Virus record (IMG/VR): IMGVR_UViG_3300009158_000031
Coordinates: 62,001 to 126,000 of that record
DNA: 64,000 bases
Strand: one strand, 5' to 3'
Part shown: piece by piece, positions 34,008-48,626 of the stretch
Layout: each line of letters begins with the position of its first letter
How positions within the stretch are numbered: position 1 is the stretch's first letter
Made by a program: the position numbers and the translations under genes
Notes under the pieces: generated by a model
The model's input: the letters and a program-made list of their open reading frames with translations, nothing else
Database searches by the model: none
Told to the model about the DNA's origin: nothing

Positions 34008-34286
34008 ATGAGCACTATTAAAACATTTTCGGAATTCATTAATGAAGCTGCAAGAAGCAATGAAGCTCTTAAGTATGTAACTTCTAAATACAAAGATCAA
34101 CGAATTAATTCAGTTACATTTAATGAAGTTCTAGTTCCTTTAGCTAATCACCTAGATGATTATGCTGATAGAGAAATGGGTGATTTAGAGTATTCGAAGA
34201 AAACATTTGCTGCTTTTAAAGCTCTAGTAGATTTAATGGTCGTGGATCAAATCGAATCAGACAAATATCATCGAGGGGAAATATAA
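34008..34286 (+). CDS. putative internal head protein
   Basis: MSTIKTFSEFINE start. Confidence 0.6.
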   Translation: MSTIKTFSEFINEAARSNEALKYVTSKYKDQRINSVTFNEVLVPLANHLDDYADREMGDLEYSKKTFAAFKALVDLMVVDQIESDKYHRGEI

Positions 34287-34295
34287 AATAATTGA

Positions 34296-34691
34296 ATGTA
34301 CGCAATTAAAACCTTTTCAGAATTCGTTAATGAAGGTAAAACTTCAGGATTTAATAGAACTTATACTATGGGTTCTACTTGGTGGGCTTTATGGAAAATT
34401 GAAAACAAAGAAGATTATACTATAAAACAAGATTCTTTTACTAAAACTTTCGAAGTGTATACTAAAGATAAAGAACCTAAATTATCTTTCGTTTTTGATT
34501 ATGGTCGTAATGTAGTTTTCACCAATGATTCACCTAAACAATTTGAGTTAAAAAGAGTTGATCCTAAAGCAAAAGCTAAAGCCGAAGAAACCGATGCCGA
34601 AACTGGTAAAAAAGAAGTTCTTCCTGGTGGAACTCCAAAAGAGGAAGAAGCAGAAGGTGAATTAGAAACCGATAAAACAGAAGAAGAATAA
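34296..34691 (+). CDS. putative internal head protein
   Basis: MYAIKTFSEFVNE start; acidic tail. Confidence 0.6.
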   Translation: MYAIKTFSEFVNEGKTSGFNRTYTMGSTWWALWKIENKEDYTIKQDSFTKTFEVYTKDKEPKLSFVFDYGRNVVFTNDSPKQFELKRVDPKAKAKAEETDAETGKKEVLPGGTPKEEEAEGELETDKTEEE

Positions 34692-34707
34692 AAAATATAT
34701 AATAACA

Positions 34708-35574
34708 ATGAATCATTTACCAACATACTCGGATTTTATTCTAGGTCCTCCAATTGCATTTGATGGAACCAACTTAAAAGTTGGTCAAAGCATTGTAGCT
34801 GCTGATGGTTACTCGGGTATTATAATTTCAAGAGAAATGGTTAATGGACGAATAATGTTCAGGGATCATTTAGGAGTACATCATTTAGTTGAATCGCATA
34901 ATGTAGTTATCGATGAAGCCATTAATGAAGATCTTCAATGGTGGGAAGTTACCAAAGGTATACTTGCTGCTGATGCAATTAAAACAGGAATGGCTATTGC
35001 CGGTGGTGGTCTTGCTATTGCCGCAGTAATTTTCTCTCAATGGTTTGCCGGTATCTCTCAGAAAATGATTGCCGCTAGAAAAGATGCTAAATTGAAAGCT
35101 TCGGCTGGAGCAATCGCTACTAAATTTAACGATGATCCAGAATTAAATGGATTTATGACTAAACTTCAACAATTCCCTTATATGAAGCCTCTTATGGCAG
35201 GTAAAAGAGAAACTGTTAAAGTTGCTGCCAATAATAAAGAAAGATCTAAGATCTTAAGAGAAATGGCTAAATATGTAAAATCTAAGCTAACTCCAGAAGA
35301 AATGGAATTCTTTATAGAAGTTAATAAGATGCTTAAAACCAAACCATTAGAAACTAATGATGGTCAAAAAGTTGAAGAAGATTTGCAACAAATGGCCGAT
35401 GCTGTTTTAGATCCATCAAATTCTAATGCAGAATCTTCTATTAATAAAGATCCAAATAGAACTGTTGGTACAGGAACTTATACCTCTACTGCATCAGATC
35501 TAAATGTGAAAACTAAAGGTATATACAAAACTAATGATCCTGCATCTGGTGGTTGGAATCCAATTATGACTTAA
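34708..35574 (+). CDS. hypothetical protein with central hydrophobic helix
   Basis: MNHLPTYSDF start; INE site; GMAIAGGGLAIAAVIF. Confidence 0.6.
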   Translation: MNHLPTYSDFILGPPIAFDGTNLKVGQSIVAADGYSGIIISREMVNGRIMFRDHLGVHHLVESHNVVIDEAINEDLQWWEVTKGILAADAIKTGMAIAGGGLAIAAVIFSQWFAGISQKMIAARKDAKLKASAGAIATKFNDDPELNGFMTKLQQFPYMKPLMAGKRETVKVAANNKERSKILREMAKYVKSKLTPEEMEFFIEVNKMLKTKPLETNDGQKVEEDLQQMADAVLDPSNSNAESSINKDPNRTVGTGTYTSTASDLNVKTKGIYKTNDPASGGWNPIMT

Positions 35575-35628
35575 TTAGGCATATAACTATATGTCATAGA
35601 TAAATATAAAAAACAAAATAATACAAAT

Positions 35629-35931
35629 ATGAAAAATTTAATGTCTTTCGACGAATTCGTAGTTAATGAAGCTGGTAAATACGATGCTTCAGGATTTAAT
35701 CCGGCAGCAGAAGCTACTAGCGATGAATTCAATCAAGAATTAACTCCAGGAAAAAAATACAATGTTAAAAAAGGAGAAGAAACTTCTCTTTGCATTTATC
35801 AAGGTAATACTGACGGAGTTTATATCTTCAACCCAGAAGCTAAAGAAGATGGTATAACTACTTCTCCATGTGAATTTACTGAAGCTGAATATGCTGCTGC
35901 ATTTAAAGCTGGTGAAATCGTTGCTGCTTAA
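35629..35931 (+). CDS. putative internal head protein, single copy of a small beta domain
   Basis: MKNLMSFDEFVVNE; LTPGKKY..IYQG..DGVYIFN. Confidence 0.65.
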   Translation: MKNLMSFDEFVVNEAGKYDASGFNPAAEATSDEFNQELTPGKKYNVKKGEETSLCIYQGNTDGVYIFNPEAKEDGITTSPCEFTEAEYAAAFKAGEIVAA

Positions 35932-35952
35932 TTAAAAACTTAAAAATTCTAT

Positions 35953-36738
35953 ATGAAGAATCTAAAAACATTTTCTGAATTCGTATCAGAAGCCGCTGAA
36001 TTTAATCCAGCTAATACATCTGATATAGATGTTCTATTGCCTGCAATTAAATCTGCATCAGAGCTAATGCCTGGTAAAGAATACGTCATTAAATTAGATG
36101 GTAAAACTCATTCGAATATGATGTATCAAGGAGTAAGTGATGGTAGTTATATCTTCAATTCCGAAGATATGGAAACTGTGCTTAATCTTAAGGATGACCA
36201 AATTAATAGTGCTGTTTCTGATGGTGGTGTTCAACCAGTAAATGAAGCAGTTAAAAGAACTGCAGATCAAGTAAATAAAGATGCAGAAGATCGAATCAAA
36301 AATCAAATTGCTCGTTATTCAGAAATGATGAAATCTAAACCAGAAAAAGCTAATGTTTATAAAGCTCAATTGGATTTAGCTCATGCTAAAATGACGGTTG
36401 TTAATTTGAAGAAAAAGGTTGATGCTCTAAGAGAATCTACCGAATTAGATGAATCTAAACTTTATAAAGGAAAAGAAGTTTTACCTGATTATATTGATCC
36501 ACGAAGAGATTTTGGTGCTCCTGTTAAAAACAGTAAAGAGTTAAAAGTTGGTGCTGAATATGTTATATATGAGCCTGGAATGGATAACTGGCAAGCAGAA
36601 AACATTTATCAAGGTTACACTGGTGGAATTCATATATTCAATTCATCTACACAATTTGGTGAAGCGGAACCTCTAGAATTAACTGACAAAGAATTAGAAT
36701 CAGCTATTAAAGATGGCGAAATTATTAAACAAAACTAA
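35953..36738 (+). CDS. putative internal head polyprotein with two copies of the same small domain
   Basis: MKNLKTFSEFVSE; L.PG.EY..YQG...G..IFN twice, separated by VNEA and LDES sites. Confidence 0.65.
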   Translation: MKNLKTFSEFVSEAAEFNPANTSDIDVLLPAIKSASELMPGKEYVIKLDGKTHSNMMYQGVSDGSYIFNSEDMETVLNLKDDQINSAVSDGGVQPVNEAVKRTADQVNKDAEDRIKNQIARYSEMMKSKPEKANVYKAQLDLAHAKMTVVNLKKKVDALRESTELDESKLYKGKEVLPDYIDPRRDFGAPVKNSKELKVGAEYVIYEPGMDNWQAENIYQGYTGGIHIFNSSTQFGEAEPLELTDKELESAIKDGEIIKQN

Positions 36739-38026: not shown

Positions 38027-39640
38027 ATGGCAGGCTTTGTAAATAGAGAGGAAACCTACGCTGGTAGACCATCCGCATCTTCGAGAAATGTCGTTTCTAA
38101 AGCTCTTAAGTCGTTATCATCTTTCGGGATGATATACGATGATATGGTTCTTAGAAACTCAAAAGCCATAGGTATCAATGAAGACCGTTTCGGTTGGAGA
38201 TTAGATCCAAGAAATGCAGCCGGTGGTGAATATGACGATTATGCTCTATTTGCCAACCTTTCAATGACGGATATTAATCTCCGTAAAAGTATTTCTATTT
38301 TTGACAAATCTTATATTAAAAAGAGAGAGGATCTTAGAAAATTCTCTATTCAAGATGAAATTGAAGAGATTCTCGATACCCTATGTGACGAATGTGTCGT
38401 CTATGACGAAAAAAATTACTTCTGTACACCATTAACTTTTGATGATCAGACACTTGAACCGGAAACACTAGAAGCCGTTAAGTATGCATTAGATACAAAC
38501 TTTAAAAGAGTTTATCAATACTTTGGTTTCAATAACGATATTTCTGCTTGGTCTTATTTTCGTAAATGGTTAATTGATGGATATCTCGCATTTGAGATTA
38601 TCTACAATAAAGAACAAACTAGAATTATCGGTTTCAAAGAACTTGATCCAGTATCTTTAGAACCAGGTCTTGATAAAGAGGGTAAGAAAATTTGGAAACA
38701 ATTTAAAGCTCAACCTGGTAAAGAAAGAGTTATATATGATTCTCAACTAATTTATCTTTCATATGCACATGCCAATACCGTAAGTCGTGTTTCTTACGTA
38801 GAACGTCTTATTCGTGCATTTAACTTGCTTCGTATCATGGAGCATTCAAGAGTTATTTGGGCTACGGTAAATGCCTCATTCAAAACTAAATTTGTAATTC
38901 CGGTTGGTGGTAAATCCAAAACTAGAGCTCGTCAAAGCTTAGGTGTTTTGATGCAAAATTATCGTGAGAATATTGATTTTGATACAGAATCAGGAGAACT
39001 TAAAGTTAACGGTAAACCAATGATGCCTTTCAATAAAGAGTATTGGTTACCATCCGGTGAAGCTGGAGAACCTACTATCGAGAATATTGGTAATGATGGT
39101 CCAGATTTATCAGATACAGATGCTCTTAAATATTTCCGAGAAAAACTAATTAAAGTATCTAAAATTCCTCTTTCTCGTTTTGATATGGAATCACCTCCAT
39201 CATGGGAAATGAATGCTGAAGGTATGACAAGAGATGAAATTAAATTTGGTCGTTTTGTTAATCGTATGCGTTCAGTTTATCAAGAGATTCTTGTTAAACC
39301 ATTATGGATTCAAATGTGTTTAGACTTTCCAGAACTTAAAGAAGATGATGCTTTTAAAGCTCAAATTGGAATTAAGTTTAACAAATATAACATCTTTGAA
39401 GAAATGAAAGAAATTGAAATCCTTCAAAAACGTCTAGATTTTGTTACTTCAATGAAAGATGGTCTTGTTGAACAAGATGCTAATATGAACGAAATCAAGT
39501 ATTTTGCATCAGAATTCTTAATTCAACGTTTCTTAGGTTTATCATCAGATGATATCCGAACTAATAAGAAAATGAAAGAAATTGAAGATGAAGAAAAAAT
39601 TGCTTCTGCTAAGAAAGCTGCTGAAGCAACTGGAATGTAA
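38027..39640 (+). CDS. 20: portal protein (gp20)
   Basis: FRKWLIDG, RAFNLLRIMEH, EYWLP, YFREKL..SKIPLSRF, ITRDE-like MTRDEIKF. Confidence 0.95.
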   Translation: MAGFVNREETYAGRPSASSRNVVSKALKSLSSFGMIYDDMVLRNSKAIGINEDRFGWRLDPRNAAGGEYDDYALFANLSMTDINLRKSISIFDKSYIKKREDLRKFSIQDEIEEILDTLCDECVVYDEKNYFCTPLTFDDQTLEPETLEAVKYALDTNFKRVYQYFGFNNDISAWSYFRKWLIDGYLAFEIIYNKEQTRIIGFKELDPVSLEPGLDKEGKKIWKQFKAQPGKERVIYDSQLIYLSYAHANTVSRVSYVERLIRAFNLLRIMEHSRVIWATVNASFKTKFVIPVGGKSKTRARQSLGVLMQNYRENIDFDTESGELKVNGKPMMPFNKEYWLPSGEAGEPTIENIGNDGPDLSDTDALKYFREKLIKVSKIPLSRFDMESPPSWEMNAEGMTRDEIKFGRFVNRMRSVYQEILVKPLWIQMCLDFPELKEDDAFKAQIGIKFNKYNIFEEMKEIEILQKRLDFVTSMKDGLVEQDANMNEIKYFASEFLIQRFLGLSSDDIRTNKKMKEIEDEEKIASAKKAAEATGM

Positions 39641-39681: not shown

Positions 39682-41583
39682 ATGAGTCAAAAGTATTTGC
39701 TCGTATTGGAAAGATCTTCTTCTGAATTGGACATCAAAACAGAAGGTGACAATTACATCCTAGAAGGAATCTTTACAGAAATCGGCGTTAAAAACAAAAA
39801 CAATCGTATTTACGACGAAAAGGAAGTTCTTCCTCACATAGATGAACTTCTTCAAAAAGTAAAAGGAAGTAAACTTTTAGGTGAATTAGATCATCCTAAA
39901 TCTTTTGAAGTTTCTTTAAAAAATGCTTCTCATGTTATTGAAGCTTTAGATTACGACAAAAACACTAAGAAGGTAATGGGAAGAATCCGTTTACTTAATA
40001 CTAGTGCTGGAAAAGAAGCAAAGGCTCTGGTTGATGCTGGTATTCCTTTACACATTTCTAGTCGTGCTGCTGGAGTGGTTGAAAGTAATGGTCACGTTAA
40101 AATCAAAAAAATGTTTACTTACGATTTAGTTGCAGATCCTGGATTTGCTAATGCTGAATTATCAAGAGTAAATGAAGCATTTGGATTTGAAATGGATGAT
40201 ACATTAGGTCTTTACGAAATGCCTTATAGTGCTAAATTAGCCGAGTCTTTCGAAGATCACGAAAAAATTGATGAAAACAAACAAACTCAAAACATAAACA
40301 AATCTTCAAAAATGAATAATACAACAGAGAACATATCAGTTGAAGATTTTAACGAATATACAAAAATCGTTAAAAACGAAATTGAAAATCTTAAAAAACA
40401 AATCGCTGAAAGTAACACTGATTCTGTAACTGAAAGTACTGAATCATTAGTTAAGTACACTGAAACTATTGCCAAACGAGTAAATCAAATCCAAGAAAAT
40501 TTAGGATCTTTAAAAGAGAACTTCGATCATTTGATATCTCACAATGATTACATCGTAGAAAACCTTGAAAAGGTTAAAGATTACGCTGAAATGGTTGGCG
40601 AAAAATCAAATCAAGGAATTAACTACTCAGAAAAACTTGCTGAATCGGTTGACCACTTAATTGAATATACTAAAATGGTTGCTGAAAAAGCAGATAGTGG
40701 AATTTCTTACACTGAAAGAATTGCTGAATCTGTTGATTCTTCGATCGAATATCAAAATCATGTTGCTAAAGAAGTTAATGAGCGTTTTGCTTATCAAACT
40801 TACATCAATGAACAAGTTGACAATATCATTTCACATACCGATTATATCGTTGAAGGTTGTGATTCAATTATTAAGTACAGTGAGTACCTAAAAGAGAATC
40901 AAGCAAGCTTAACCGGTTATATGGATTATGTTGTTAAAGGTCTTAACGAAGGTACTTCTAATAACGATCCATCCGATAATAACAAATCTGAAAATGCAAA
41001 CGAAGATGATACTAAAGTAAATGAAAATGCTGAAGCTATCAATTCAACTGAAAGTGCTGATGATTTTGAAAATGAAATTAACTCTAGAGTTGATGCTATT
41101 TTAGAATCTGCTAAATCCCAAAAAGATGAAGAGAAAAAATCTAAAATGCATTTCTTTAATTTCTTAGCTGAATCTAAAAGAAACGAATTTGAATCTTTAA
41201 CTGCTGAAGTTCAAGAAAAAATTGTTGATCTTTTCGAAAATACTAAATGGTACGGATCAATTGATGCTAATAACATCTGGGAATCTGCTTTCACTAAACC
41301 AGTTGCTAAAAATGATTGGTTAGCTAATATGCCAAATCGTTATAACGAAGCTTGGAATTCTTTAAACGAATCTCAAAAGAATGCTATTAAAGCTCAAGCA
41401 TCAGTAAGAGTTCTTAGTACACAATATCAAATCGATTCATTTTGGTCTTCAAGAGATTTAAGAGTTTCTAAAGTAGAATCAACTGAACCGGTTGCTCCTA
41501 TTAACGAATCTTCTAAGTATGAAACTCCTCAAGATTATATGGATACTGTTGCTGCTGAATTAAAACGTAGATTCAAAAGATAA
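39682..41583 (+). CDS. 21: prohead protease (gp21) fused to scaffold/core region (gp22-like)
   Basis: LEGIF, NRIY, LGELDHP, ISSRAAG, YDLVADPGF, followed by ~450 aa of acidic coiled-coil with many xxE sites. Confidence 0.9.
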   Translation: MSQKYLLVLERSSSELDIKTEGDNYILEGIFTEIGVKNKNNRIYDEKEVLPHIDELLQKVKGSKLLGELDHPKSFEVSLKNASHVIEALDYDKNTKKVMGRIRLLNTSAGKEAKALVDAGIPLHISSRAAGVVESNGHVKIKKMFTYDLVADPGFANAELSRVNEAFGFEMDDTLGLYEMPYSAKLAESFEDHEKIDENKQTQNINKSSKMNNTTENISVEDFNEYTKIVKNEIENLKKQIAESNTDSVTESTESLVKYTETIAKRVNQIQENLGSLKENFDHLISHNDYIVENLEKVKDYAEMVGEKSNQGINYSEKLAESVDHLIEYTKMVAEKADSGISYTERIAESVDSSIEYQNHVAKEVNERFAYQTYINEQVDNIISHTDYIVEGCDSIIKYSEYLKENQASLTGYMDYVVKGLNEGTSNNDPSDNNKSENANEDDTKVNENAEAINSTESADDFENEINSRVDAILESAKSQKDEEKKSKMHFFNFLAESKRNEFESLTAEVQEKIVDLFENTKWYGSIDANNIWESAFTKPVAKNDWLANMPNRYNEAWNSLNESQKNAIKAQASVRVLSTQYQIDSFWSSRDLRVSKVESTEPVAPINESSKYETPQDYMDTVAAELKRRFKR

Positions 41584-41691: not shown

Positions 41692-43302
41692 ATGTACTTA
41701 ATTAACGAAAGTGAAATTTTTTCAAAATGGGCTCCAATTATCGAGTCTAATACTGGAATCACTGAGCGTGCTAGAGTTGAGTGGATGTCAAAATATTGCC
41801 ATAACCACGAATTATATGAGAACAACTCATATGCACAACTAGGCGCTGTGAACGGTATGGGTGCTACTCGTTTCCCTGGAAACCCTGGTACTCAAGATGC
41901 TTTTGCTACATCCACTTCTGGATCTGGTGATAAAGCTCACACATTGCTACCTCTTGCTATGCAAGTTGCAGCTCAAACAATCGGATTGGATTTAGTTCCA
42001 GTCGTGCCAATGCCTGGTCCAATGGGTGTATTAACTTACTTGGATTTCGTATATGCTGGTGGTAAAACTGCTGGTACTGGTGCTGATGTTCCTTTAATGG
42101 TTAAATTAGACTACGGTTCTAACACTATCCCTTCATTTACTGTAGGTGGTTCTGGTGCTTCTGGTGGTGCTACTTTCTACATGGTAGGATCTTCTCGTTT
42201 GGATGGTAATCCAATCTTACGTGTTGCTGGAACTTTAACTGGTTCTAACACAATCAAAGATTGTTTAACTAACATCACAATCGGTGGTGCTTCTGCTGGA
42301 ACTGTTACTAACTATTCTATCGAATTAGTTAAAGCTTTAGAAGATCACATCACTGGATTCTCTGGTAATGCTCTTGCTAACAACGATTACACTGGATTTG
42401 ATATTAACGATCCATATTCTCGTAACGACGGTGAAAGTACTACAGATAACGTAATGAACTTAAGTCTATTCAACAAATCAGTTGAAGCTAAGACTTTCCA
42501 AGTTGCTGCTGCTGTTACTCGTGAGCAAGTTCAAGACTTGAAACAATTTGGTATTGATGCAGTTTCTCAAGTAGAAGCAGTTCTTATCAATGAGTTAACT
42601 CAATCAATTAACAAGAACATCCTTGGACGTATCTTCGCTTTAGGAGAAAGAAACCACGAATACGTAATCCGTACTCAAGGTCAAAACTTCTTCTTGAACT
42701 TAGGTGCTACTGCCCTTTTAGTTTCTAACTCTGCGTCAGCAACTAACTTCGGTTCATTTATCCAATCAACTACTTTACGTGGTGCTACAATGGCTGCTAC
42801 TGAAAACGTTAACTCTGCTTCAGAAAACATGCATACTCGTCAACGTAAAATTATGTCTAAAGTATTAGCTATCGCTAACTTAATCGCTATTAGAGGTCGT
42901 CGTGGACCAGCTACTTTCGTAGTTACTAACGGTCAAGTTTGTTCAGCTTTACAAGACGTTGCTGGTTTCGTACCTGCTCCAATGGCTAACACAATTAACC
43001 AAATGAGTGGTTCACTTTATCCTATCGGTACTTTAGCTGGTATGGCAGTGTACAACGATCCTAACATGAACTGGGCAGATACTCGTTTCTGCGTAGGTCG
43101 TAAAGGTGACGGTAACTCTCCAGGATTAGTATTCATGCCTTATTTAATGGCTGAAAGCGTTCAAACTATCGCTGAAGGTACTATGGCTCCTAAAGTTGCG
43201 GTTAAATCTCGTTATGCTTTAGTTGAAGCTGGTTTCCACCCAGAAACTATGTACTTAACTTCAGGTGTATCTTTAAGTGCTACATTCGGTTCTTTAGTAT
43301 AA
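41692..43302 (+). CDS. 23: major capsid protein (gp23)
   Basis: KWAPII, VPVVPMPGPMG, EQVQDLK..GIDA, INELTQSINK, PYL, KSRYAL. Confidence 0.95.
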   Translation: MYLINESEIFSKWAPIIESNTGITERARVEWMSKYCHNHELYENNSYAQLGAVNGMGATRFPGNPGTQDAFATSTSGSGDKAHTLLPLAMQVAAQTIGLDLVPVVPMPGPMGVLTYLDFVYAGGKTAGTGADVPLMVKLDYGSNTIPSFTVGGSGASGGATFYMVGSSRLDGNPILRVAGTLTGSNTIKDCLTNITIGGASAGTVTNYSIELVKALEDHITGFSGNALANNDYTGFDINDPYSRNDGESTTDNVMNLSLFNKSVEAKTFQVAAAVTREQVQDLKQFGIDAVSQVEAVLINELTQSINKNILGRIFALGERNHEYVIRTQGQNFFLNLGATALLVSNSASATNFGSFIQSTTLRGATMAATENVNSASENMHTRQRKIMSKVLAIANLIAIRGRRGPATFVVTNGQVCSALQDVAGFVPAPMANTINQMSGSLYPIGTLAGMAVYNDPNMNWADTRFCVGRKGDGNSPGLVFMPYLMAESVQTIAEGTMAPKVAVKSRYALVEAGFHPETMYLTSGVSLSATFGSLV

Positions 43303-43336: not shown

Positions 43337-43366
43337 AAAGAGCTTCCTTCGGGAAGCTCTTTTTTT
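43337..43366 (+). terminator. strong intrinsic terminator with C(UUCG)G loop after the capsid gene
   Basis: AAAGAGCTTCC-TTCG-GGAAGCTC-TTTTTTT. Confidence 0.95.
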
Positions 43367-43417: not shown

Positions 43418-44041
43418 ATGATATATCCCAGTCAAGCCATTCAAATTAGACCAGATCTAATAGAATACCGAGAACTTTGTTCAAAATTTGGTTATCAACC
43501 AAGCAAAGAAGAATATGAGGAGACTCTTAAATTTCTTTTATTATTTCATACTGGAATAGGCCATACATGTGAATCTAGTGAAGTAGATTTTTTCTATGAA
43601 AATATGGATATGCATCTTCTAGAAAATAATGTTAATGAATCTCTTTTTGAATCCGCTTTAATAGCAGAAGATTCAAACACCGTTGCCGATGTCGCAAAAG
43701 AGAAAGATGCGGCATTAGGACTTGTAGCTGCTGCCGGTGTTGGTGCTGCTGGTGCAGTGGCTGGTGCTGGAGCATTAGCAGTAGTTGGAGTAGTGAAAGT
43801 TGGAGGACTTATTCAATATCTATTTAAAAAAGGTAAAGTAAAAAGTGCTGCAAAAGCAGAACTTGGAGTTGCTATGAAAAAATTAGAACCTTATCAAGAG
43901 ATATACAAGATAAAAAAGGAATTGGCTACTCTTAAAGGAGAAGAATTCACTGGATTATCTTCGTTACCTGGAATGCCATCTGCTCCAGGATCACCTGCCG
44001 AGAAAAAATCTGCTCCTGCTCCTGCCTCTAAAAAGAAATAA
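43418..44041 (+). CDS. hypothetical protein with Ala/Gly/Val-rich hydrophobic stretch
   Basis: LGLVAAAGVGAAGAVAGAGALAVVGVV; VNES and IAE sites. Confidence 0.6.
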   Translation: MIYPSQAIQIRPDLIEYRELCSKFGYQPSKEEYEETLKFLLLFHTGIGHTCESSEVDFFYENMDMHLLENNVNESLFESALIAEDSNTVADVAKEKDAALGLVAAAGVGAAGAVAGAGALAVVGVVKVGGLIQYLFKKGKVKSAAKAELGVAMKKLEPYQEIYKIKKELATLKGEEFTGLSSLPGMPSAPGSPAEKKSAPAPASKKK

Positions 44042-44060: not shown

Positions 44061-46646
44061 ATGATGACTAAAAATCTAGAAAATCTTATAAGAGACGAGT
44101 ATTTAATTGCTCTATATGAAAAACAAATATTAGAAAATTTTGATAGTGCTGAGGTAGAAACCTTATTTTCTGAATTTGTTTTAAATATATCAGAACATTT
44201 TAACTTATCTATAGATGAAGATGCAACAATAGAAGATGTTATGGAAGCATTTTCAGATTGGGATCTTTCTGATAACGAAACGTATCAAGAGCTTATTGAG
44301 GCAGTTAAAAGAAAACCTCGAGCTAAAAGAAAACCTGCTAGGCCGGCTGCCAAGAAACCTGCTGCTAAGAAACCGGCACCTAAACCTAAGGCAAAATCGG
44401 ATGCCAAACCAAAACCGGATGCTAAACCAAAAGCCGAGGCAAAGCCAAAAGCGGAAGAGAAACCTAAAGGAGAAGAAAAACCTAAAGGTGAAGAAAAACC
44501 TAAATCTAATCCAGAAGCAGATGCTAAAAAGATAGAAAAGATTAATGCAGAAAAGAAGAAGATTGACGATGAGTCTAAATCGATATCTCAACAATTAGAA
44601 ACCGAGAAAGATACAGATAAAAAAGGTGAATTAGAAGCAAAGAAAAAAGGTCTTAGAGCTGATTCCGCTATGTTATTAGCAAGTAAAAAGAAACTTGAAG
44701 GTGCTGATGATGCAAAAGAGGCATCTCAAATAGCTAAGGCTAAATCTGATGCTGCTAAAAATTACGATGAGTATATAAAGATCAAACAGCAAATATCTAA
44801 ATTAGGTGAATCTGCTAATGAAGCAGAAGAATTAACTCCGGCTACTCCTGCTACTCCAGCTGCTCCTATTGCTGCTGATCCCAAGATTAAAGAAGAAAAA
44901 GAAAAACTTGAAGCTGCTGCGAAAGTTGCACTTATTGCTTCATTAGAAGGAGATTTAGCTGCCGCTAAAATCGGAATAACCACTGCTACACCTGAAAGTA
45001 AAGCAGCTGCCCAATTAACTCATGATAATCTTGTAAAGAAAATAGAAGATTTAAAAAAGGATTCTGGTGGAACTCCAGCAACCGAAGAAAAACCTAAAGT
45101 AGATCCTGAAGCAGTCAAAGCTGCAGAAGCTAAAGTAAAAACTGCAACCGAAGCTAAAACCAATGCTGAAAAAGCATTAGCCGATAATAAGGATGAAACT
45201 AAAACCGAAGAATTAAAGAAAGCAGTTGCAGATGAAGATATTAAAGTTAAGGCTGCTGAAGGAGAATTAACTAAAGCTAAAGGTGAAGATGTAAAAACTC
45301 CTGGAACTGAAGAAAAACCTAAAGTAGATCCTGAAGCAGTCAAAGCTGCAGAAGCTGAAGTTGAAAAGGCTAAAACCGCACTTAAAACAGCAACTGAAGC
45401 TAAGGCTGCTCTAAAATCAGATGCAACTCCTGAAGAGAAGACTAAGGCAGAAACCGAAGTCACTAATGCTCAAACGGCTTTAGATACTGCAAATACGAAC
45501 TTAACTAAAGCTAAAGGTGAAGATGTAAAAACCCCTAAAAAAGGAGAAACTGAAGTTGATCAGGCTGCTATTGATTCCGCAAAGAAGAAAGTTGAAGAAG
45601 CTACAAAGGCACTTGAAACCGCAAAAGCGGCTAAGGCTGCTTTAAAATCAGACGCAACCGAAGAAGAAAAAGCTGCTGCCGAAACTGCCATTACTAATGC
45701 TCAAACGGCTTTAGAAACGGCAAACGGTGAATTGACTAAAGCTGAAGGTGCTGGAAAATCCGTAAAAAAAGAAGATCCAGCAAAACCTGCTAAAAATGTT
45801 TCACCTGAAGATAAAGCCAAAATAGAAAAATTAGAAGCTAGAGCAAAAGCTTTAGAAGAAGATATTGATCAGAAATCAGATATTAATGATGAGCAATTCG
45901 ATGCATTAGGGCAGAAAAGTAATGAAATTGCTGGAGATAATGGTATGCTTAAAAATCTCTTAACTAAAATCAGATTAGAAAACACTATAGAATATAATAA
46001 CATGAGACTTAAATTGTCTAGTGATAAAGATTCCGAAAAAATTGAGGATCAAAACAAAACAGCAGAAAAAACAATCGCTAAAGCAGACGCTAATCTTACG
46101 GATGCCGAATCTCAATCTTCTGAGGATGCAGAAAAAAATGCAACTCCAGAACAAAAGGCGGAATTAAAGAAAGCCCAAGAAGCAGCGGCTAAAGAGGCTG
46201 CTAAAGGTGGTGAAGGTGGAGAAGAAGATACCGAAGCTAAATTTGCTGCTCAAAAGAAAGAAAGAGAAGCAGCCGAAAAAGCCTCTCAAGGAAAAGGTAG
46301 AGATGCTGATATAGAAGCAGTTGGTGATACTCAAGCAGCAAAAGAGAAAGATTTTAAAATAAAATCATTAGATAAGAAAGTTAGTGCTATATCTGTTGCT
46401 TGGCAAAAAATGCAAGATGAAGCTAGTAAAGCAGAAGGTGACGATAAACCTAAAAAAGAAAAAGCCGCTGCTGCAATTGAAGCCAATCTTAATAAAGCAA
46501 AAGAAGAATTAACCGCATTAAAAGGAGGAACTCCTAAGCCTAATGAATCTCTTAATGATTTTGACTCACAAATCTGGGCAATCGAATTTATTCTAGAGAG
46601 AATCAATCAACAAATGGAAGAATATCAATTCTTAATTAATGAATAA
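44061..46646 (+). CDS. 861-aa Lys/Ala/Glu-rich repetitive protein
   Basis: KP-rich linker, repeated EEKPKVDPEAVKAAEA and TNAQTAL.TAN..LTKA.G units. Confidence 0.8.
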   Translation: MMTKNLENLIRDEYLIALYEKQILENFDSAEVETLFSEFVLNISEHFNLSIDEDATIEDVMEAFSDWDLSDNETYQELIEAVKRKPRAKRKPARPAAKKPAAKKPAPKPKAKSDAKPKPDAKPKAEAKPKAEEKPKGEEKPKGEEKPKSNPEADAKKIEKINAEKKKIDDESKSISQQLETEKDTDKKGELEAKKKGLRADSAMLLASKKKLEGADDAKEASQIAKAKSDAAKNYDEYIKIKQQISKLGESANEAEELTPATPATPAAPIAADPKIKEEKEKLEAAAKVALIASLEGDLAAAKIGITTATPESKAAAQLTHDNLVKKIEDLKKDSGGTPATEEKPKVDPEAVKAAEAKVKTATEAKTNAEKALADNKDETKTEELKKAVADEDIKVKAAEGELTKAKGEDVKTPGTEEKPKVDPEAVKAAEAEVEKAKTALKTATEAKAALKSDATPEEKTKAETEVTNAQTALDTANTNLTKAKGEDVKTPKKGETEVDQAAIDSAKKKVEEATKALETAKAAKAALKSDATEEEKAAAETAITNAQTALETANGELTKAEGAGKSVKKEDPAKPAKNVSPEDKAKIEKLEARAKALEEDIDQKSDINDEQFDALGQKSNEIAGDNGMLKNLLTKIRLENTIEYNNMRLKLSSDKDSEKIEDQNKTAEKTIAKADANLTDAESQSSEDAEKNATPEQKAELKKAQEAAAKEAAKGGEGGEEDTEAKFAAQKKEREAAEKASQGKGRDADIEAVGDTQAAKEKDFKIKSLDKKVSAISVAWQKMQDEASKAEGDDKPKKEKAAAAIEANLNKAKEELTALKGGTPKPNESLNDFDSQIWAIEFILERINQQMEEYQFLINE
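45084..45356 (+). repeat. exact 48-nt intragenic direct repeat (45084-45131 and 45309-45356)
   Basis: GAAGAAAAACCTAAAGTAGATCCTGAAGCAGTCAAAGCTGCAGAAGCT occurs twice. Confidence 0.9.
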
Positions 46647-47134
46647 TGGAAATATTTAGACAAAATCTAGGTAAACGTCCAACGAAGTTCGGTATCGTTC
46701 TCGATCGATTAAAACCTAGATATCAAAAAATATTGAAGAAGAATCCCATCATTCGTAATTATTCTACGGATGATAGGCTTCTTAAATGTATCTTCAAAAT
46801 AGAAGATCGATTAATACAAGTATCACATCTAAAAAGAGTTTTTATCGAACCTAAAAGTGGAGAAATATCTTCATTTAAAATCATCAGGGAATCATATCAT
46901 CAATTTGATTGGAATTGTACTTTTTGCAATAAACCTATCAAATCTCGTATAGATAATTATGAACCAGGAAACTTTACTTGCATGAAATGCGAGAATACAT
47001 ATATTAAAGGAACTCGAAAAATTCCAAGAAGAATTATCGAGGAATCTTTGAGATTCACAGAACATGTGAAAACCTTAATGAAAGAAGATCAAAAGAAAAT
47101 TATAAAATATATCAAGAAAAATGATGAATCTTAA
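46646..47134 (+). CDS. basic Zn-ribbon hypothetical protein
   Basis: CTFC..CMKC. Confidence 0.6.
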   Translation: MEIFRQNLGKRPTKFGIVLDRLKPRYQKILKKNPIIRNYSTDDRLLKCIFKIEDRLIQVSHLKRVFIEPKSGEISSFKIIRESYHQFDWNCTFCNKPIKSRIDNYEPGNFTCMKCENTYIKGTRKIPRRIIEESLRFTEHVKTLMKEDQKKIIKYIKKNDES

Positions 47135-48626
47135 ATACTTCAGTGATTTTGTTAACGAAGCAAAAACCACTGACGCAAAAACTGTTAAAAATCCGAGAGT
47201 TAAATTAGTACTTCTAACAAATGCTAGTAAAGAATCTCATACAGTTCCTACCTTTGCAGCCGAATGTAAAAAAATGGGTGCTGAATTTATCGTTATTGAT
47301 ATTAGTACAGCAATGATTGCCGAAACCAAAGATGGTAATTTTCTAATCAGTGATAAAGAAAATCCCAAAGGTCTTAAAATCAATGCTGATAATACCGCAA
47401 TTCTTACTCGTCGTGGAGTTGTTAGAAATACTTATACAAAATCTCTAGTTGAAAAACTTCAAGATAATAACTTCTTTGTGGTTAATACTCTTGAAGCTAT
47501 TATGGCTTGCGAAAACAAATATGTTACTACTAAAATCCTTAAAGAAGCTGGAATTCCAGTTCCTAAAACTGCAATCGTTGATGGAGAAGATTCTATTGAT
47601 AGAGCGGTTAAAGATATTGGTGGTAAATTTCCAGTAGTATGTAAGATACTTTCCGGATCTCAAGGAATTGGAGTTTCTATCGTTGATTCTCTTGCTTCTC
47701 TTAAATCAGTTCTACAAACCATTTGGAAAGTGGATCCTTCAGTTGAAATCTTGATTCAAGAGAAAATTGAATCTGAATATGATTTAAGAATACACGTTTT
47801 GACGAGAAAATTCAACTCGCCAACACCAGAAGATACAGATTCAGTACTTCTTGGTTATATGAGAAGAAATCGTGTTAAAAAAGACTTCCGTACCAATTAC
47901 TCATTAGGAGGAACTGTTGAAAAAACTAAAGTAACTCCAGAACAAGAAAAAATTGCTATCGAATCAGCTAAGGCGGTTGGTTGCAATTGGTGTGGTGTGG
48001 ATATTATTGTAGATAAGAAAACTGGAAAAAATTACGTACTTGAAGTTAATGCTTCTCCCGGAACTACCGGATTAAAGAAAGCAACTGGAGTTAACGTGGT
48101 TAAAGATATCGTTCAATTCTTAATGGATAAAACCAATTGGATTCGTTCTAGAAAACGTGTTGGATTCCGTGAAGTTATTACAATTCCTAATATTGGAGAT
48201 ATGGTTGCTAAATTTGATACCGGTAATGGATCTCTTTCATGCACAATCACTTATGATAAATTAGATGTAAATGAGAAAGAGAAGATTGTTAAATGGACAC
48301 TTGGTGGAAGAGATTTTGAATCTAAATTTGTAGGATTCACTGAAACTGAAGTAGGTGATACTATCGAGAAACGTCCTGTTATCGAAATGGATATTCAATT
48401 TGCTGGTAAAGTTTATAAGAAAGTTCAAGTTGCATTAGATGATCGCTCAACCAAGAGTACTAAATTCCTTGTGAATCGTAAATTCATGGAGAGAATTGGT
48501 TGTTCCGTTGATCCAATGAGAACCTTCATCGTATCCTCATTCCCAGTAGCTTATCATGGTGGAGAAGCGAAGAAAGAGCCACATGCCGGAATTATTTTCG
48601 AATGGGATAAAAAGAAAACTAAATAA
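47121..48626 (+). CDS. RimK-family ATP-grasp ligase fused to a retropepsin-like protease domain
   Basis: NKYVTTKIL..GIPVPKT, GSQGIGV, QEKI..DLR, FRTNYSLGG, GVDII..LEVNASPG; then AKFDTGNG and LVNRKFM. Confidence 0.85.
   Translation: MMNLKYFSDFVNEAKTTDAKTVKNPRVKLVLLTNASKESHTVPTFAAECKKMGAEFIVIDISTAMIAETKDGNFLISDKENPKGLKINADNTAILTRRGVVRNTYTKSLVEKLQDNNFFVVNTLEAIMACENKYVTTKILKEAGIPVPKTAIVDGEDSIDRAVKDIGGKFPVVCKILSGSQGIGVSIVDSLASLKSVLQTIWKVDPSVEILIQEKIESEYDLRIHVLTRKFNSPTPEDTDSVLLGYMRRNRVKKDFRTNYSLGGTVEKTKVTPEQEKIAIESAKAVGCNWCGVDIIVDKKTGKNYVLEVNASPGTTGLKKATGVNVVKDIVQFLMDKTNWIRSRKRVGFREVITIPNIGDMVAKFDTGNGSLSCTITYDKLDVNEKEKIVKWTLGGRDFESKFVGFTETEVGDTIEKRPVIEMDIQFAGKVYKKVQVALDDRSTKSTKFLVNRKFMERIGCSVDPMRTFIVSSFPVAYHGGEAKKEPHAGIIFEWDKKKTK

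What the first reader, a model, noticed from the sequence alone, without database searches (positions are those of the whole stretch)
47121..48626. Packaging-tagged RimK ligase fused to a retropepsin-like protease
Seen: a complete RimK-type ATP-grasp domain followed by an AKFDTG protease-like domain, with an MNLKYFSDFVNE N-terminus, among late virion genes. Known: RimK polyglutamylates ribosomal protein bS6 and is often encoded next to such proteases. In Flavobacterium ribosomes, bS6, bS18 and bS21 sequester the anti-SD. Inference: this is an injected writer/eraser pair that may remodel host ribosomes, though other substrates are possible.
Basis: partly seen in the sequence, partly recalled or inferred. 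Interest (0 to 1): 0.6.

Follow-up and report, generated by a model that had tools for sequence, protein, structure and literature searches.

The report
Capsid-tagged phage RimK–RimB glutamate ligase/protease

Summary
The ORF at 47121..48626 (+, 501 aa) is real. It has four parts: a 13-residue leader, a RimK-family alpha-L-glutamate ligase (residues ~25-340), a RimB/PF05618 retropepsin-like domain with an invariant DTG (~344-470), and a short conserved tail. It belongs to a large, well-conserved phage family. In the two relatives examined it keeps the same position, last in a T4-type head module.

The leader is a portable tag on 22-25 otherwise unrelated proteins of this 254 kb genome. It matches the experimentally defined T4 capsid targeting sequence position for position, and an S77 prohead protease lies 5.5 kb upstream. 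The "packaging tag" reading is therefore well supported, though only indirectly. A distant homolog in Yersinia phage YerA41 was detected in purified particles.

The "writer/eraser" reading rests on homology and intact catalytic motifs. The bS6/anti-SD target is not supported. Flavobacterium-type bS6 ends in Lys-Ala rather than Glu, phage genes lack SD sequences, and the ligase fails the S6-ligase equivalog model. A co-tagged small phage protein ending in ...TEEE is a local candidate acceptor, but Mosig and YerA41 have nothing equivalent.

Verdict: a new variant of known kinds, with the domain order reversed relative to bacterial RimBK. Interest is moderate to high.

The parts
47121..48626 (+). 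Whole gene: leader + RimK-family ligase + RimB-like retropepsin + C-terminal tail (501 aa, P0001)
47121..47159 (+). 13-residue leader MMNLKYFSDFVNE, a T4-CTS-like capsid targeting/propeptide tag. Predicted S77 cleavage lies after Glu13, between 47159 and 47160, before Ala14.
   Evidence: 22-25 tagged ORFs; conservation collapses after the Glu; T4 IPIII/IPII MKTYQEFIAE|A; residues 1-24 have pLDDT under 50; conserved across the family
47193..48140 (+). RimK-family alpha-L-glutamate ligase: pre-ATP-grasp plus ATP-grasp, residues ~25-340
   Evidence: Pfam PF08443 E 2e-34; TIGR00768 153 bits over cut-off; PDB profile match to RimK 7qyr E 2e-32; Foldseek match to RimK 7qys, TM 0.87-0.88; E(V/I)N(A/S)SPG motif in 121/121 members
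48150..48530 (+). RimB/PF05618-type retropepsin-like aspartic peptidase domain, residues ~344-470
   Evidence: 18/25 members match PF05618; 9g59 E 1.9e-11; fold: 9g59/2pma/9g58 TM 0.70-0.77, then HIV-1 protease
48216..48224 (+). Codons for Asp366-Thr367-Gly368, the predicted catalytic DTG
   Evidence: Invariant in A1; K[FL]DTGN in 119/121 members; aligned to the DTG of 9g59; RimB D31 in DTG is essential (PMC11957791)
48531..48623 (+). Conserved C-terminal tail, residues 471-501, with Y478, G490, I491, F493; role unknown
39682..41583 (+). T4 gp21-type S77 prohead protease (633 aa), the enzyme expected to remove the leader
   Evidence: PF03420 E 6e-13; PHROG 207
38027..39640 (+). T4 gp20-type portal
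41692..43302 (+). T4 gp23-type major capsid protein
43337..43362 (+). Strong hairpin terminator after the capsid gene. No further + strand terminator was predicted up to 50000, so X1-X2-X3-RimKB-ORF48626 look like one unit.
43418..44041 (+). X1, 207 aa, unknown function; conserved position after the capsid gene
44061..46646 (+). X2, 861 aa, Lys/Ala/Glu-rich. It has an internal CTS-like ETYQELIEA|VKRK at residues 74-82 and ends ...YQFLINE. Probable internal head/core protein.
   Evidence: counterparts of 466-997 aa in relatives
46646..47134 (+). X3, 162 aa zinc-ribbon protein. It overlaps the RimKB start by 14 nt and is conserved at 48% identity in the same position in relatives. Function unknown.
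34296..34691 (+). Leader-tagged 131 aa protein ending ...DKTEEE. The terminal Glu run is conserved in all 7 aligned members. Candidate phage-encoded acceptor (speculative).
34008..36738 (+). Array of ORFs just upstream of the head module; four carry a strict leader (34008, 34296, 35629, 35953) and 34708 a degenerate one. Comparable to the leader-tagged internal protein genes of T4.
50546..50944 (+). Another leader-tagged ORF (MKHIQNFEEFVNE|S), 132 aa

Best explanation
The gene encodes a capsid-loaded bifunctional poly-alpha-glutamate enzyme. It lies at the end of the head-gene block, apparently in one unit with X1, X2 and X3, just downstream of the capsid-gene terminator. Its 13-residue leader works like the T4 capsid targeting sequence: it docks the protein in the scaffolding core of the prohead, and the S77 prohead protease cuts it off after Glu13 (V-N-E|A). 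The mature ~488-residue enzyme stays in the head and enters the host with the DNA. There, using ATP and L-glutamate, the RimK domain adds alpha-linked glutamates to a Glu-terminated acceptor or makes free poly-alpha-glutamate. The RimB-type retropepsin domain, probably acting as a dimer, cuts runs of about five or more glutamates and may stimulate the ligase, as RimB does for RimK. Shown here: the architecture, intact catalytic motifs, both folds, family-wide conservation of leader plus both active sites, the tag's recurrence and its match to T4, the presence of the protease, and conserved synteny in two relatives. Inferred: packaging, cleavage, injection, both enzyme activities and late expression. 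Unknown: the acceptor.
For: Architecture and folds. Catalytic motifs are invariant, with the ATP-grasp motif in 121/121 and K[FL]DTGN in 119/121 members. Leader: 22-25 tagged ORFs at a fixed N-terminal position against 7 internal matches in 71,382 residues. The tagged proteins' bodies are unrelated except one pair. Codon third positions are poorly conserved, which points to selection on the protein. Conservation stops at the Glu, and the next residue is mostly Ser or Ala. T4 IPIII/IPII start MKTYQEFIAE|A. T4's targeting residues 4 and 7 and processing residues 8 and 10 (PMC9026906) correspond to the conserved F/Y, F, [LVI] and E here. An S77 protease is present. Members with a tandem leader-module-leader arrangement fit a cleavable tag. 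The order portal-protease-MCP-X1-X2-X3-RimKB is conserved in two relatives examined, and a relative uses the same leader on other proteins. Leader-like N-termini also occur on Mosig RimK-RimB and on the Melnitz RimK-only protein. The YerA41 homolog was found by LC-MS/MS in purified particles (PMC7354516). T4 precedent: CTS fusions, including enzymes, are packaged and delivered (PMC9026906; PMC3012670). RimB biology: PMC11957791. Lake metatranscriptome contigs tile the gene.
Against: There are no virion proteomics for this phage or a close relative. The YerA41 particle list also contains DNA polymerases, a DNA ligase, the terminase and the endolysin, so it may include contaminants, and YerA41 shows no such leader. 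No acceptor was identified. Mosig has no Glu-Glu-terminated ORF. No late-promoter motif could be assigned. In Mosig the gene sits in the replication module rather than the head module, and in YerA41 it is a middle-class gene. Homodimerisation of the protease domain and tetramerisation of the ligase were not tested.
Confidence: 0.55

Rival explanations
1. One reading: the injected enzyme polyglutamylates and trims host ribosomal protein bS6, disturbing the bS6/bS18/bS21 pocket that hides the anti-SD, and so remodels host translation.
For: bS6 is the only established protein substrate of RimK, and RimB trims it (PMC11957791). The bS6 C-terminal helix directly contacts the 16S 3' end in F. johnsoniae (PMC7797042). 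The phage looks Bacteroidota-associated: its genes lack SD motifs and have A-rich leaders, and its capsid protein is nearest to those of Lak and Tenacibaculum phages. Some Bacteroidota bS6 proteins have acidic or poly-Glu tails.
Against: F. johnsoniae-type bS6 ends ...AKLKSTKA with no terminal Glu. The four sampled genomes with that tail are the ones encoding RimB-RimK hybrids, and the tested D. psychrophila hybrid did not glutamylate P. fluorescens RpsF. Phage genes are depleted in SD motifs, 18 against 36.5 expected, so liberating the anti-SD brings no evident benefit. The ligase fails the S6-ligase equivalog, 94.7 against 331 bits, and scores higher on MptN. The phage encodes no bS21 or bS6 of its own.
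Confidence: 0.15
2. The protein is not packaged. It is an ordinary cytoplasmic phage enzyme, like the untagged cyanophage RimK genes, that acts during infection. On this view the N-terminal motif is a family-wide feature with another role, or is inherited and no longer functional.
For: The cyanophage S-RIM8 RimK has no leader. In Mosig the gene lies next to regA, the clamp loader and the DNA polymerase. The YerA41 homolog is middle-class, and its particle association could be contamination. No direct packaging data exist.
Against: The leader is kept together with both active sites in nearly every one of the 121 family members. It matches the T4 CTS at the functionally mapped positions. It sits on 22-25 unrelated proteins clustered beside head genes. 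The gene is syntenic with the head module in two relatives examined.
Confidence: 0.25
3. The acceptor is a co-packaged phage protein. The leader-tagged 131 aa product of 34296..34691, whose C-terminus ...DKTEEE(E) is conserved, is polyglutamylated by the RimK domain and kept at a set length by the RimB domain. This would give a strongly anionic internal or ejected protein.
For: It is the only ORF in the genome ending in three or more Glu. The leader and the terminal Glu run are conserved in all 7 aligned members at 64-92% identity to the window copy. The tail resembles the Glu-terminated RpsF tails that RimK extends (PMC11957791, Table 1). It has the same tag and lies beside the head module.
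Against: Only 8 clusters of this protein were found, against more than 1,300 matches for the enzyme. Mosig has no EE-terminated ORF, and YerA41 has only four ending in EE. There is no evidence of interaction.
Confidence: 0.15
4. The main product is free poly-alpha-L-glutamate rather than a modified protein. The fused RimB domain drives RimK towards polymer synthesis, draining host glutamate or ATP or supplying a polyanion.
For: [quoted passage not shown] Permanent fusion would maximise that stimulation. No universal acceptor was found across the lineages that carry the fusion.
Against: This rests purely on analogy, and the benefit to the phage is unclear. It is compatible with the best explanation, not exclusive of it.
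Confidence: 0.2

Closest known systems
RimK/RimB of the Pseudomonas RimABK module (PMC11957791; PMC7343187)
   Same: It has a RimK-family alpha-L-glutamate ligase paired with a PF05618 retropepsin-like peptidase carrying a catalytic DTG, which is writer/eraser logic. Both folds and both motif sets are present.
   Different: Here the two are fused in one chain, encoded by a phage and preceded by a capsid-targeting leader. There is no RimA. Identity to cellular RimK is only 24-31%, and to stand-alone RimB 27-29%. The substrate is unknown, and the S6-ligase equivalog is not met.
Bacterial RimBK hybrid (Desulfotalea psychrophila DP2392; mostly Flavobacteriales and Rhodobacterales; PMC11957791)
   Same: It is a single polypeptide carrying both domains. 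The bacterial hybrid has proven protease activity, and its ligase substrate is likewise unresolved.
   Different: The domain order is reversed: bacterial is RimB then RimK, phage is RimK then RimB. The sampled Flavobacterium-type hybrids use D-S-G, and their RimK part is no closer to the phage protein than stand-alone RimKs are. This indicates an independent fusion. No K-then-B fusion turned up in the pattern-seeded scan of 185,579 species genomes.
T4 internal proteins IPI/IPII/IPIII with their capsid targeting sequence, and the packaged enzyme Alt (PMC9026906; PMC3012670)
   Same: It has an N-terminal ~10-13 residue tag, K-T-[FY]-x-E-F-[LVI]-x-E|[A/S], on unrelated cargo proteins. A gp21/S77 protease cuts after Glu. 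The tagged genes cluster. Alt is the precedent for an injected modifying enzyme.
   Different: The cargo here is a 55 kDa two-enzyme fusion. The host is probably Bacteroidota and the phage a 254 kb relative of the Lak/PAU/Tenacibaculum group. Far more genes are tagged, 22-25. Packaging has not been shown experimentally.
Yersinia phage YerA41 gp066 (g112, 'ribosomal protein modification protein') and GN1; Pelagibacter phage Mosig_00005
   Same: They have the same RimK-then-RimB architecture at 33-34% identity (tblastn) with FDTGN conserved. The YerA41 protein is particle-associated by LC-MS/MS. Mosig has a leader-like N-terminus.
   Different: They are distant and sit in different genome neighbourhoods (next to the ribonucleotide reductase genes in YerA41; regA and DNA polymerase in Mosig). 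YerA41 has no recognisable leader. They are annotated only as 'structural protein' or 'glutathione synthetase', and the fusion and tag were not described.
Cyanophage and Melnitz RimK-like genes (PHROG 2599, 'ribosomal protein S6 glutaminyl transferase')
   Same: These are RimK-family ligases carried by T4-like phages. The Melnitz protein has a leader-like N-terminus.
   Different: They have no RimB domain, and the S-RIM8 version has no leader.

Membership tests
RimK family alpha-L-glutamate ligases (PF08443 / TIGR00768) | Score above the curated family cut-offs | tested here: met
   PF08443 119.2 bits against 21; TIGR00768 153 against 143.4
RimK family alpha-L-glutamate ligases (PF08443 / TIGR00768) | ATP-grasp fold with pre-ATP-grasp domain | tested here: met
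   AF2 model pLDDT 81. Foldseek top hits are RimK 7qys/5zct/4iwx at TM 0.84-0.88, followed by ArgX/LysX.
RimK family alpha-L-glutamate ligases (PF08443 / TIGR00768) | Conserved nucleotide/Mg-binding motifs | tested here: met
   K133, K175, D294, E308 and N310 are invariant. E(V/I)N(A/S)SPG is present in 121/121 members. These align to the RimK motifs in 7qyr and 4iwx.
30S ribosomal protein S6--L-glutamate ligase (equivalog NF007764) | Score above the equivalog cut-off, as a proxy for substrate specificity for bS6 | tested here: not met
   94.7 bits against 331. MptN 131.5/350, LysX 110.8/275.6 and CofF 97.5/300 also fail.
30S ribosomal protein S6--L-glutamate ligase (equivalog NF007764) | A Glu-terminated bS6 is available in the host | tested here: inconclusive
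   The host is unknown. In the Bacteroidota sample the F. johnsoniae-type tail is ...KLKSTKA, while others have acidic tails.
RimB / PF05618 retropepsin-like aspartic peptidases | Pfam gathering score | tested here: inconclusive
   P0001 scores 26.5 against 27 bits and matches only the C-terminal half of the model. 18 of 25 family members match at E <= 0.01, best 1e-7.
RimB / PF05618 retropepsin-like aspartic peptidases | Full-domain homology to solved PF05618 proteins, with the catalytic D-T/S-G aligned | tested here: met
   Profile A3 against 9g59 E 1.9e-11, 9g58 3.7e-10, 2pma 2.6e-6. 'akfDtGn' aligns to 'AKMDTGA'.
RimB / PF05618 retropepsin-like aspartic peptidases | Retropepsin fold | tested here: met
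   Domain model pLDDT 84.6, pTM 0.82. Foldseek hits are 9g59/2pma/9g58 at TM 0.70-0.77, then HIV-1 protease at TM 0.6-0.7.
RimB / PF05618 retropepsin-like aspartic peptidases | Homodimer forming an Asp dyad; cleavage specific for runs of five or more Glu | not testable with these tools
The activity needs biochemistry.
Bacterial RimBK hybrid (Little et al. 2025) | RimB domain N-terminal to RimK | tested here: not met
   The phage order is RimK (25-340) then RimB (344-470). Bacterial hybrids have RimB first and RimK at ~213-447 (PMC11957791).
T4-type capsid-targeted internal proteins (CTS cargo) | N-terminal ~10-residue tag with aromatic targeting positions and [LIV]-x-E processing site | tested here: met
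   The consensus (I)KT[FY]xEF[LVI]NE|[SA] compares with T4 MKTYQEFIAE|A. Position roles are from PMC9026906.
T4-type capsid-targeted internal proteins (CTS cargo) | gp21/S77 prohead protease, gp20 portal and gp23 capsid protein in the same genome | tested here: met
   PF03420, PF07230 and PF07068 all score over their cut-offs.
T4-type capsid-targeted internal proteins (CTS cargo) | Tag shared by otherwise unrelated proteins | tested here: met
   22 tagged ORFs, with only one paralogous pair among their bodies.
T4-type capsid-targeted internal proteins (CTS cargo) | Physical presence in the virion with the tag removed | not testable with these tools
   Only indirect evidence exists: the YerA41 homolog is particle-associated (PMC7354516).

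The most novel reading that the evidence does not exclude
This would be a virion-delivered protein-polyglutamylation module: a phage loads a ligase/protease pair into its capsid and injects it, so that glutamate chains are written and edited on host or co-injected targets within seconds of infection. It would be a polyglutamylation counterpart of T4 Alt ADP-ribosylation, and a widespread, previously unrecognised class of ejected enzyme in aquatic jumbo phages. In a host whose bS6 ends in Glu it could reprogramme the ribosome.
Probability: 0.35. Interest if true: 0.8.

Novelty: new variant of a known kind. Interest (0 to 1): 0.62.

Why it matters
RimK/RimB is so far a bacterial system for tuning ribosomes and making poly-alpha-glutamate. 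Finding it fused in reverse order, strongly conserved across at least 120 sequence clusters, and carrying a T4-type capsid-loading tag suggests that polyglutamylation is a tool phages deliver at the moment of infection. Three things become testable: what RimK-family enzymes do when bS6 is not a suitable acceptor (an open point for bacterial RimBK hybrids too); whether the T4 capsid-targeting code operates far outside the Straboviridae; and whether the 13-residue tag could serve as a cargo-loading handle in phages of Bacteroidota. The 22-25 tagged genes also give a ready list of candidate ejected proteins for this phage group.

Tried and rejected
1. Complex prediction of the RimK domain (residues 14-345) with the mature product of ORF 34296 gave 'no answer' (score 0.00). 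This is neither support nor evidence against.
2. The T4 late-promoter motif TATAAATA is not enriched in the window (8 against 12.1 expected) and is not upstream of any of the 22 leader-tagged genes. Expression timing therefore remains inferred from position only.
3. The phage encodes no bS21 or bS6 (PF01165, PF01250: no match).
4. X3, the conserved upstream zinc-ribbon partner, got no convincing family or Atlas match. It has no conserved acidic tail, so it is not a LysW-like carrier.
5. Generality of a Glu-tailed phage acceptor fails: Mosig has no ORF ending in EE, and YerA41 has four ending in EE and none in EEE.
6. Megablast against phage records found nothing.
7. The scan of cellular genomes found only RimK-domain matches at 32% identity or less, none reaching the protease domain. 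That scan is pattern-seeded, so absence is not proven.
8. The domain-only word search for stand-alone relatives of the C-terminal domain returned mostly fragments of the same fusion family.
9. Rfam and ARAGORN found no RNA genes in the window.
10. It carries no context and could not separate phage from cell.
Full report
OBSERVATION. The window is bases 62001-126000 of a single 254,393 bp IMG/VR virus contig, which CheckV rates 83% complete. GC content is about 32%, and nearly all genes are on the + strand. The ORF at 47121..48626 (+) is intact and encodes 501 aa. It begins with tandem ATGs in an A-rich context and overlaps the end of the upstream ORF by 14 nt.

ANATOMY. Residues 1-24 are predicted to be disordered (pLDDT under 50).

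Residues ~25-340 are a RimK-family alpha-L-glutamate ligase. The evidence:
- Pfam PF08443, E 2e-34.
- NCBIfam TIGR00768, 153 bits against a cut-off of 143.4.
- A family-profile match to solved RimK 7qyr, E 2e-32.
- Foldseek top hits to RimK 7qys/5zct/4iwx at TM 0.84-0.88.

No substrate-specific equivalog is reached. The S6 ligase model scores 94.7 against 331, MptN 131.5 against 350, LysX 110.8 against 275.6 and CofF 97.5 against 300.

Residues ~344-470 are a PF05618 (RimB-type) retropepsin-like peptidase:
- Alone, this sequence falls just under the Pfam cut-off (26.5 against 27 bits), but 18 of 25 family members match.
- A profile of the domain matches the solved PF05618 peptidases 9g59 (E 1.9e-11), 9g58 and 2pma over the whole domain, with 'akfDtGn' aligned to 'AKMDTGA'.
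- A domain model (pLDDT 84.6, pTM 0.82) finds 9g59, 2pma and 9g58 at TM 0.70-0.77, and then HIV-1 protease.

K364, D366, T367, G368, N369 and G370 are invariant in the 25-member alignment, as are the ATP-grasp residues K133, K175, D294, E308 and N310.

FAMILY. The word search returned more than 1,300 matches. The best 120 clusters are 52-96% identical over the full length, about 490-500 aa, and many sit on contigs of 100-261 kb. Across the 121 sequences (P0001 plus its 120 homologs), E(V/I)N(A/S)SPG is present in 121 and K[FL]DTGN in 119. A leader is recognisable in almost all of them. A few members carry an extra ~85-residue Cys-rich N-terminal module that has its own leader and is followed by the normal leader. 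That arrangement is what one would expect of a cleavable tag.

Among named phages, only three have the full architecture, at 33-34% identity: Pelagibacter phage Mosig and Yersinia phages YerA41 and GN1. Cyanophages and the Melnitz phages carry RimK alone.

A pattern-seeded scan of 185,579 species genomes found only RimK-domain matches at 32% identity or less, and none reached the protease domain.

The bacterial 'RimBK' hybrid has the opposite domain order (PMC11957791). I recovered four such hybrids from Bacteroidota genomes. They are 455-466 aa, with RimB first and a D-S-G motif. Their RimK part is about 30% identical to the phage protein, which is no closer than stand-alone RimKs. The phage fusion is therefore an independent, reversed fusion.

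CONTEXT. Upstream lie T4-type genes for head closure, DNA end protector, the gp20 portal, an S77/gp21 prohead protease (633 aa) and the gp23 capsid protein. A strong terminator follows the capsid gene (43337-43362). No + strand terminator is predicted from there to 50000. Next come X1 (207 aa), X2 (861 aa, Lys/Ala/Glu-rich), X3 (162 aa zinc ribbon), the fusion gene and a 152 aa ORF, tightly packed or overlapping. The clamp loader starts at 49560.

The order portal, protease, capsid protein, X1, X2, X3, fusion, and later clamp loader is the same in relatives on 226 kb and 261 kb contigs. X3 is 48% identical between them.

The capsid protein is nearest to an uncultured 462 kb phage (54%), the Lak phages of Prevotella (about 40%), and the Tenacibaculum and Sphingomonas PAU jumbo phages (about 33%).

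SD-like motifs are depleted upstream of genes, 18 against 36.5 expected, and upstream regions are 50-64% A. This is the Bacteroidia pattern. The DNA occurs in freshwater and lake metagenomes. Contigs from four lake metatranscriptome libraries tile the gene. That is weak evidence for expression, because DNA carry-over into RNA libraries cannot be excluded.

THE LEADER. A motif at residues ~4-13, (I)-K-T-[FY]-x-E-F-[LVI]-N-E, heads 22 ORFs by a strict pattern and 25 by a looser one. The looser pattern matches only 7 times in 71,382 internal residues, which gives about 0.9 expected at N-termini. Four further observations bear on what it is:
- The proteins that carry it are unrelated apart from one pair of paralogs.
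- Third codon positions carry far less information than first and second positions, so the constraint acts on the peptide.
- Conservation ends exactly at the Glu, and the next residue is usually Ser or Ala (7 each of 22), with Gly in 2.
- Tagged genes cluster, for example at 34008-36738 beside the head module, and in seven consecutive ORFs elsewhere in the genome.

T4 IPIII and IPII, read from the T4 record, begin MKTYQEFIAE|A. In T4 the first ten residues suffice for packaging. Residues 4 and 7 mainly drive targeting, residues 8 and 10 drive gp21 processing, and foreign proteins fused to the tag are packaged and delivered into cells (PMC9026906; PMC3012670; PMC10229621). Aligned at the Glu, those four T4 positions fall on the conserved F/Y, F, [LVI] and E of this phage's leader.

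A relative uses the same leader on other genes. X2 carries an internal ETYQELIEA|VKRK just before a very basic region. Mosig's fusion protein (MQVQPFKNYLEE|A) and the Melnitz RimK (TQKFSQFITEE) have leader-like N-termini.

I conclude that the leader is a T4-type capsid targeting/propeptide sequence and that cleavage is predicted after Glu13. This rests on homology and pattern. No proteomic data exist for this phage.

The only experimental hint comes from YerA41. Its homolog (g112, 'ribosomal protein modification protein') was identified by LC-MS/MS in purified particles and belongs to the middle expression class (PMC7354516). That list of 63 proteins also includes DNA polymerases, a DNA ligase, the terminase and the endolysin, so contamination is possible.

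WHAT IT DOES. Known biology (PMC11957791):
- RimK adds alpha-linked Glu to the Glu-terminated C-terminus of RpsF and can make free poly-alpha-Glu.
- RimB is a dimeric retropepsin-like endopeptidase whose DTG aspartate is essential.
- RimB needs about five or six contiguous Glu and nothing else for recognition.
- RimB also stimulates poly-Glu synthesis by RimK.
- The bacterial RimBK hybrid from D. psychrophila is proteolytically active but did not glutamylate P. fluorescens RpsF.

By homology, the phage protein should write and trim alpha-poly-Glu. The genome contains only one encoded run of four or more Glu. The protease's substrates must therefore be mostly chains made by the ligase.

THE TARGET. 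In F. johnsoniae the anti-SD is sequestered by bS21, bS18 and bS6, and the bS6 C-terminal helix (Trp100, Arg103, Lys107) holds the last 16S nucleotides (PMC7797042). Four findings weigh against it as the target:
- In a sample of Bacteroidota genomes, the 113 aa bS6 type that matches those residue numbers ends ...WAERRRAKLKSTKA, with no terminal Glu.
- The four genomes with that tail are exactly the four that carry RimB-RimK hybrids. In that group, therefore, the cellular enzyme has no Glu-terminated bS6 to extend.
- The phage's own genes avoid SD sequences.
- The phage encodes no bS21 or bS6 of its own.

Other Bacteroidota bS6 proteins do have acidic or poly-Glu tails, and the host is unknown. 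bS6 therefore remains possible but is not favoured.

One phage-encoded candidate acceptor exists. The leader-tagged 131 aa product of 34296..34691 ends ...DKTEEE, and both its leader and its terminal Glu run are conserved in all 7 aligned members. However, only 8 clusters of this protein were found. Mosig has no EE-terminated ORF, and YerA41 has only four ending in EE. The single complex prediction gave no answer. Free poly-Glu synthesis is an equally open possibility.

VERDICT. The feature is best filed as a new variant of known kinds. It is a phage-specific, reversed-order RimK-RimB fusion carrying a T4-type capsid-targeting leader, conserved as the last gene of the head module in a large group of freshwater jumbo phages. 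The paper library holds no description of it. Overall confidence in the packaged-and-delivered enzyme model is about 0.55. Confidence that both domains are catalytically competent is higher. Confidence in any specific acceptor is low.

Noticed in passing
window 52575..55813: An RNA repair/quality-control cluster encoded by the phage: a TROVE/Ro60-like protein (52575..54164), SmpB (54225..54656, PF01668 E 3e-47) and a CCA-adding/poly(A)-polymerase-type nucleotidyltransferase (55079..55813). ARAGORN and Rfam found no tmRNA, Y RNA or tRNA in the window.
   Followed up: partly
window 44061..46646: X2 is an 861 aa Lys/Ala/Glu-rich low-complexity protein next to the capsid gene. It has an internal T4-CTS-like ETYQELIEA|VKRKPRAKRKP at residues 74-82 and ends ...EEYQFLINE. 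Relatives have counterparts of 466-997 aa. It is possibly a processed basic internal/core protein.
   Followed up: partly
genome 133186..136501 (outside the window); window 34008..36738: Arrays of consecutive small ORFs, most carrying the same N-terminal leader. One is seven in a row, four of them starting MKN[YH]INTFE[EG]FLNE. They resemble hypervariable internal-protein loci of T-even phages, on a much larger scale.
   Followed up: partly
family members P0094, P0104, P0107, P0109 (not in the window): These 573-577 aa versions have an extra ~85-residue Cys-rich N-terminal module with its own leader, followed by the usual leader, giving two tandem cleavable units. P0008, P0012 and P0013 instead carry a C-terminal DUF5661 extension.
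   Followed up: no
loci L068, L069, L072, L074 and L076-L079 (Bacteroidota genomes G013, G023, G048, G052): The four sampled genomes with the F. johnsoniae-type bS6 tail (...KLKSTKA, no terminal Glu) are exactly the four that encode RimB-RimK hybrids. This suggests the bacterial hybrids act on something other than the bS6 C-terminus.
   Followed up: partly
window 46646..47134: X3 is a basic 162 aa zinc-ribbon protein whose stop overlaps the fusion gene's start. Its position is conserved, and it is 48% identical to the counterpart in L004. Its function is unknown.
   Followed up: partly
L001 (YerA41) record 35049..35624: YerA41_076 (194 aa as called here from an upstream ATG at 35040; the annotated CDS is 35049..35624) ends ...FDSEE, reminiscent of the E. 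coli RpsF tail GDSEE, and lies about 5 kb downstream of that phage's RimK-RimB gene. YerA41_074 nearby is annotated as LysW-like. This may be chance: 4 of 211 ORFs in that genome end in EE.
   Followed up: no
window 41692..41715 and L004 4224..: The capsid protein begins MYLINESE here and MNLINENE in the relative, so a leader-like L-I-N-E sits at its extreme N-terminus. The meaning for capsid-protein processing is unknown.
   Followed up: no
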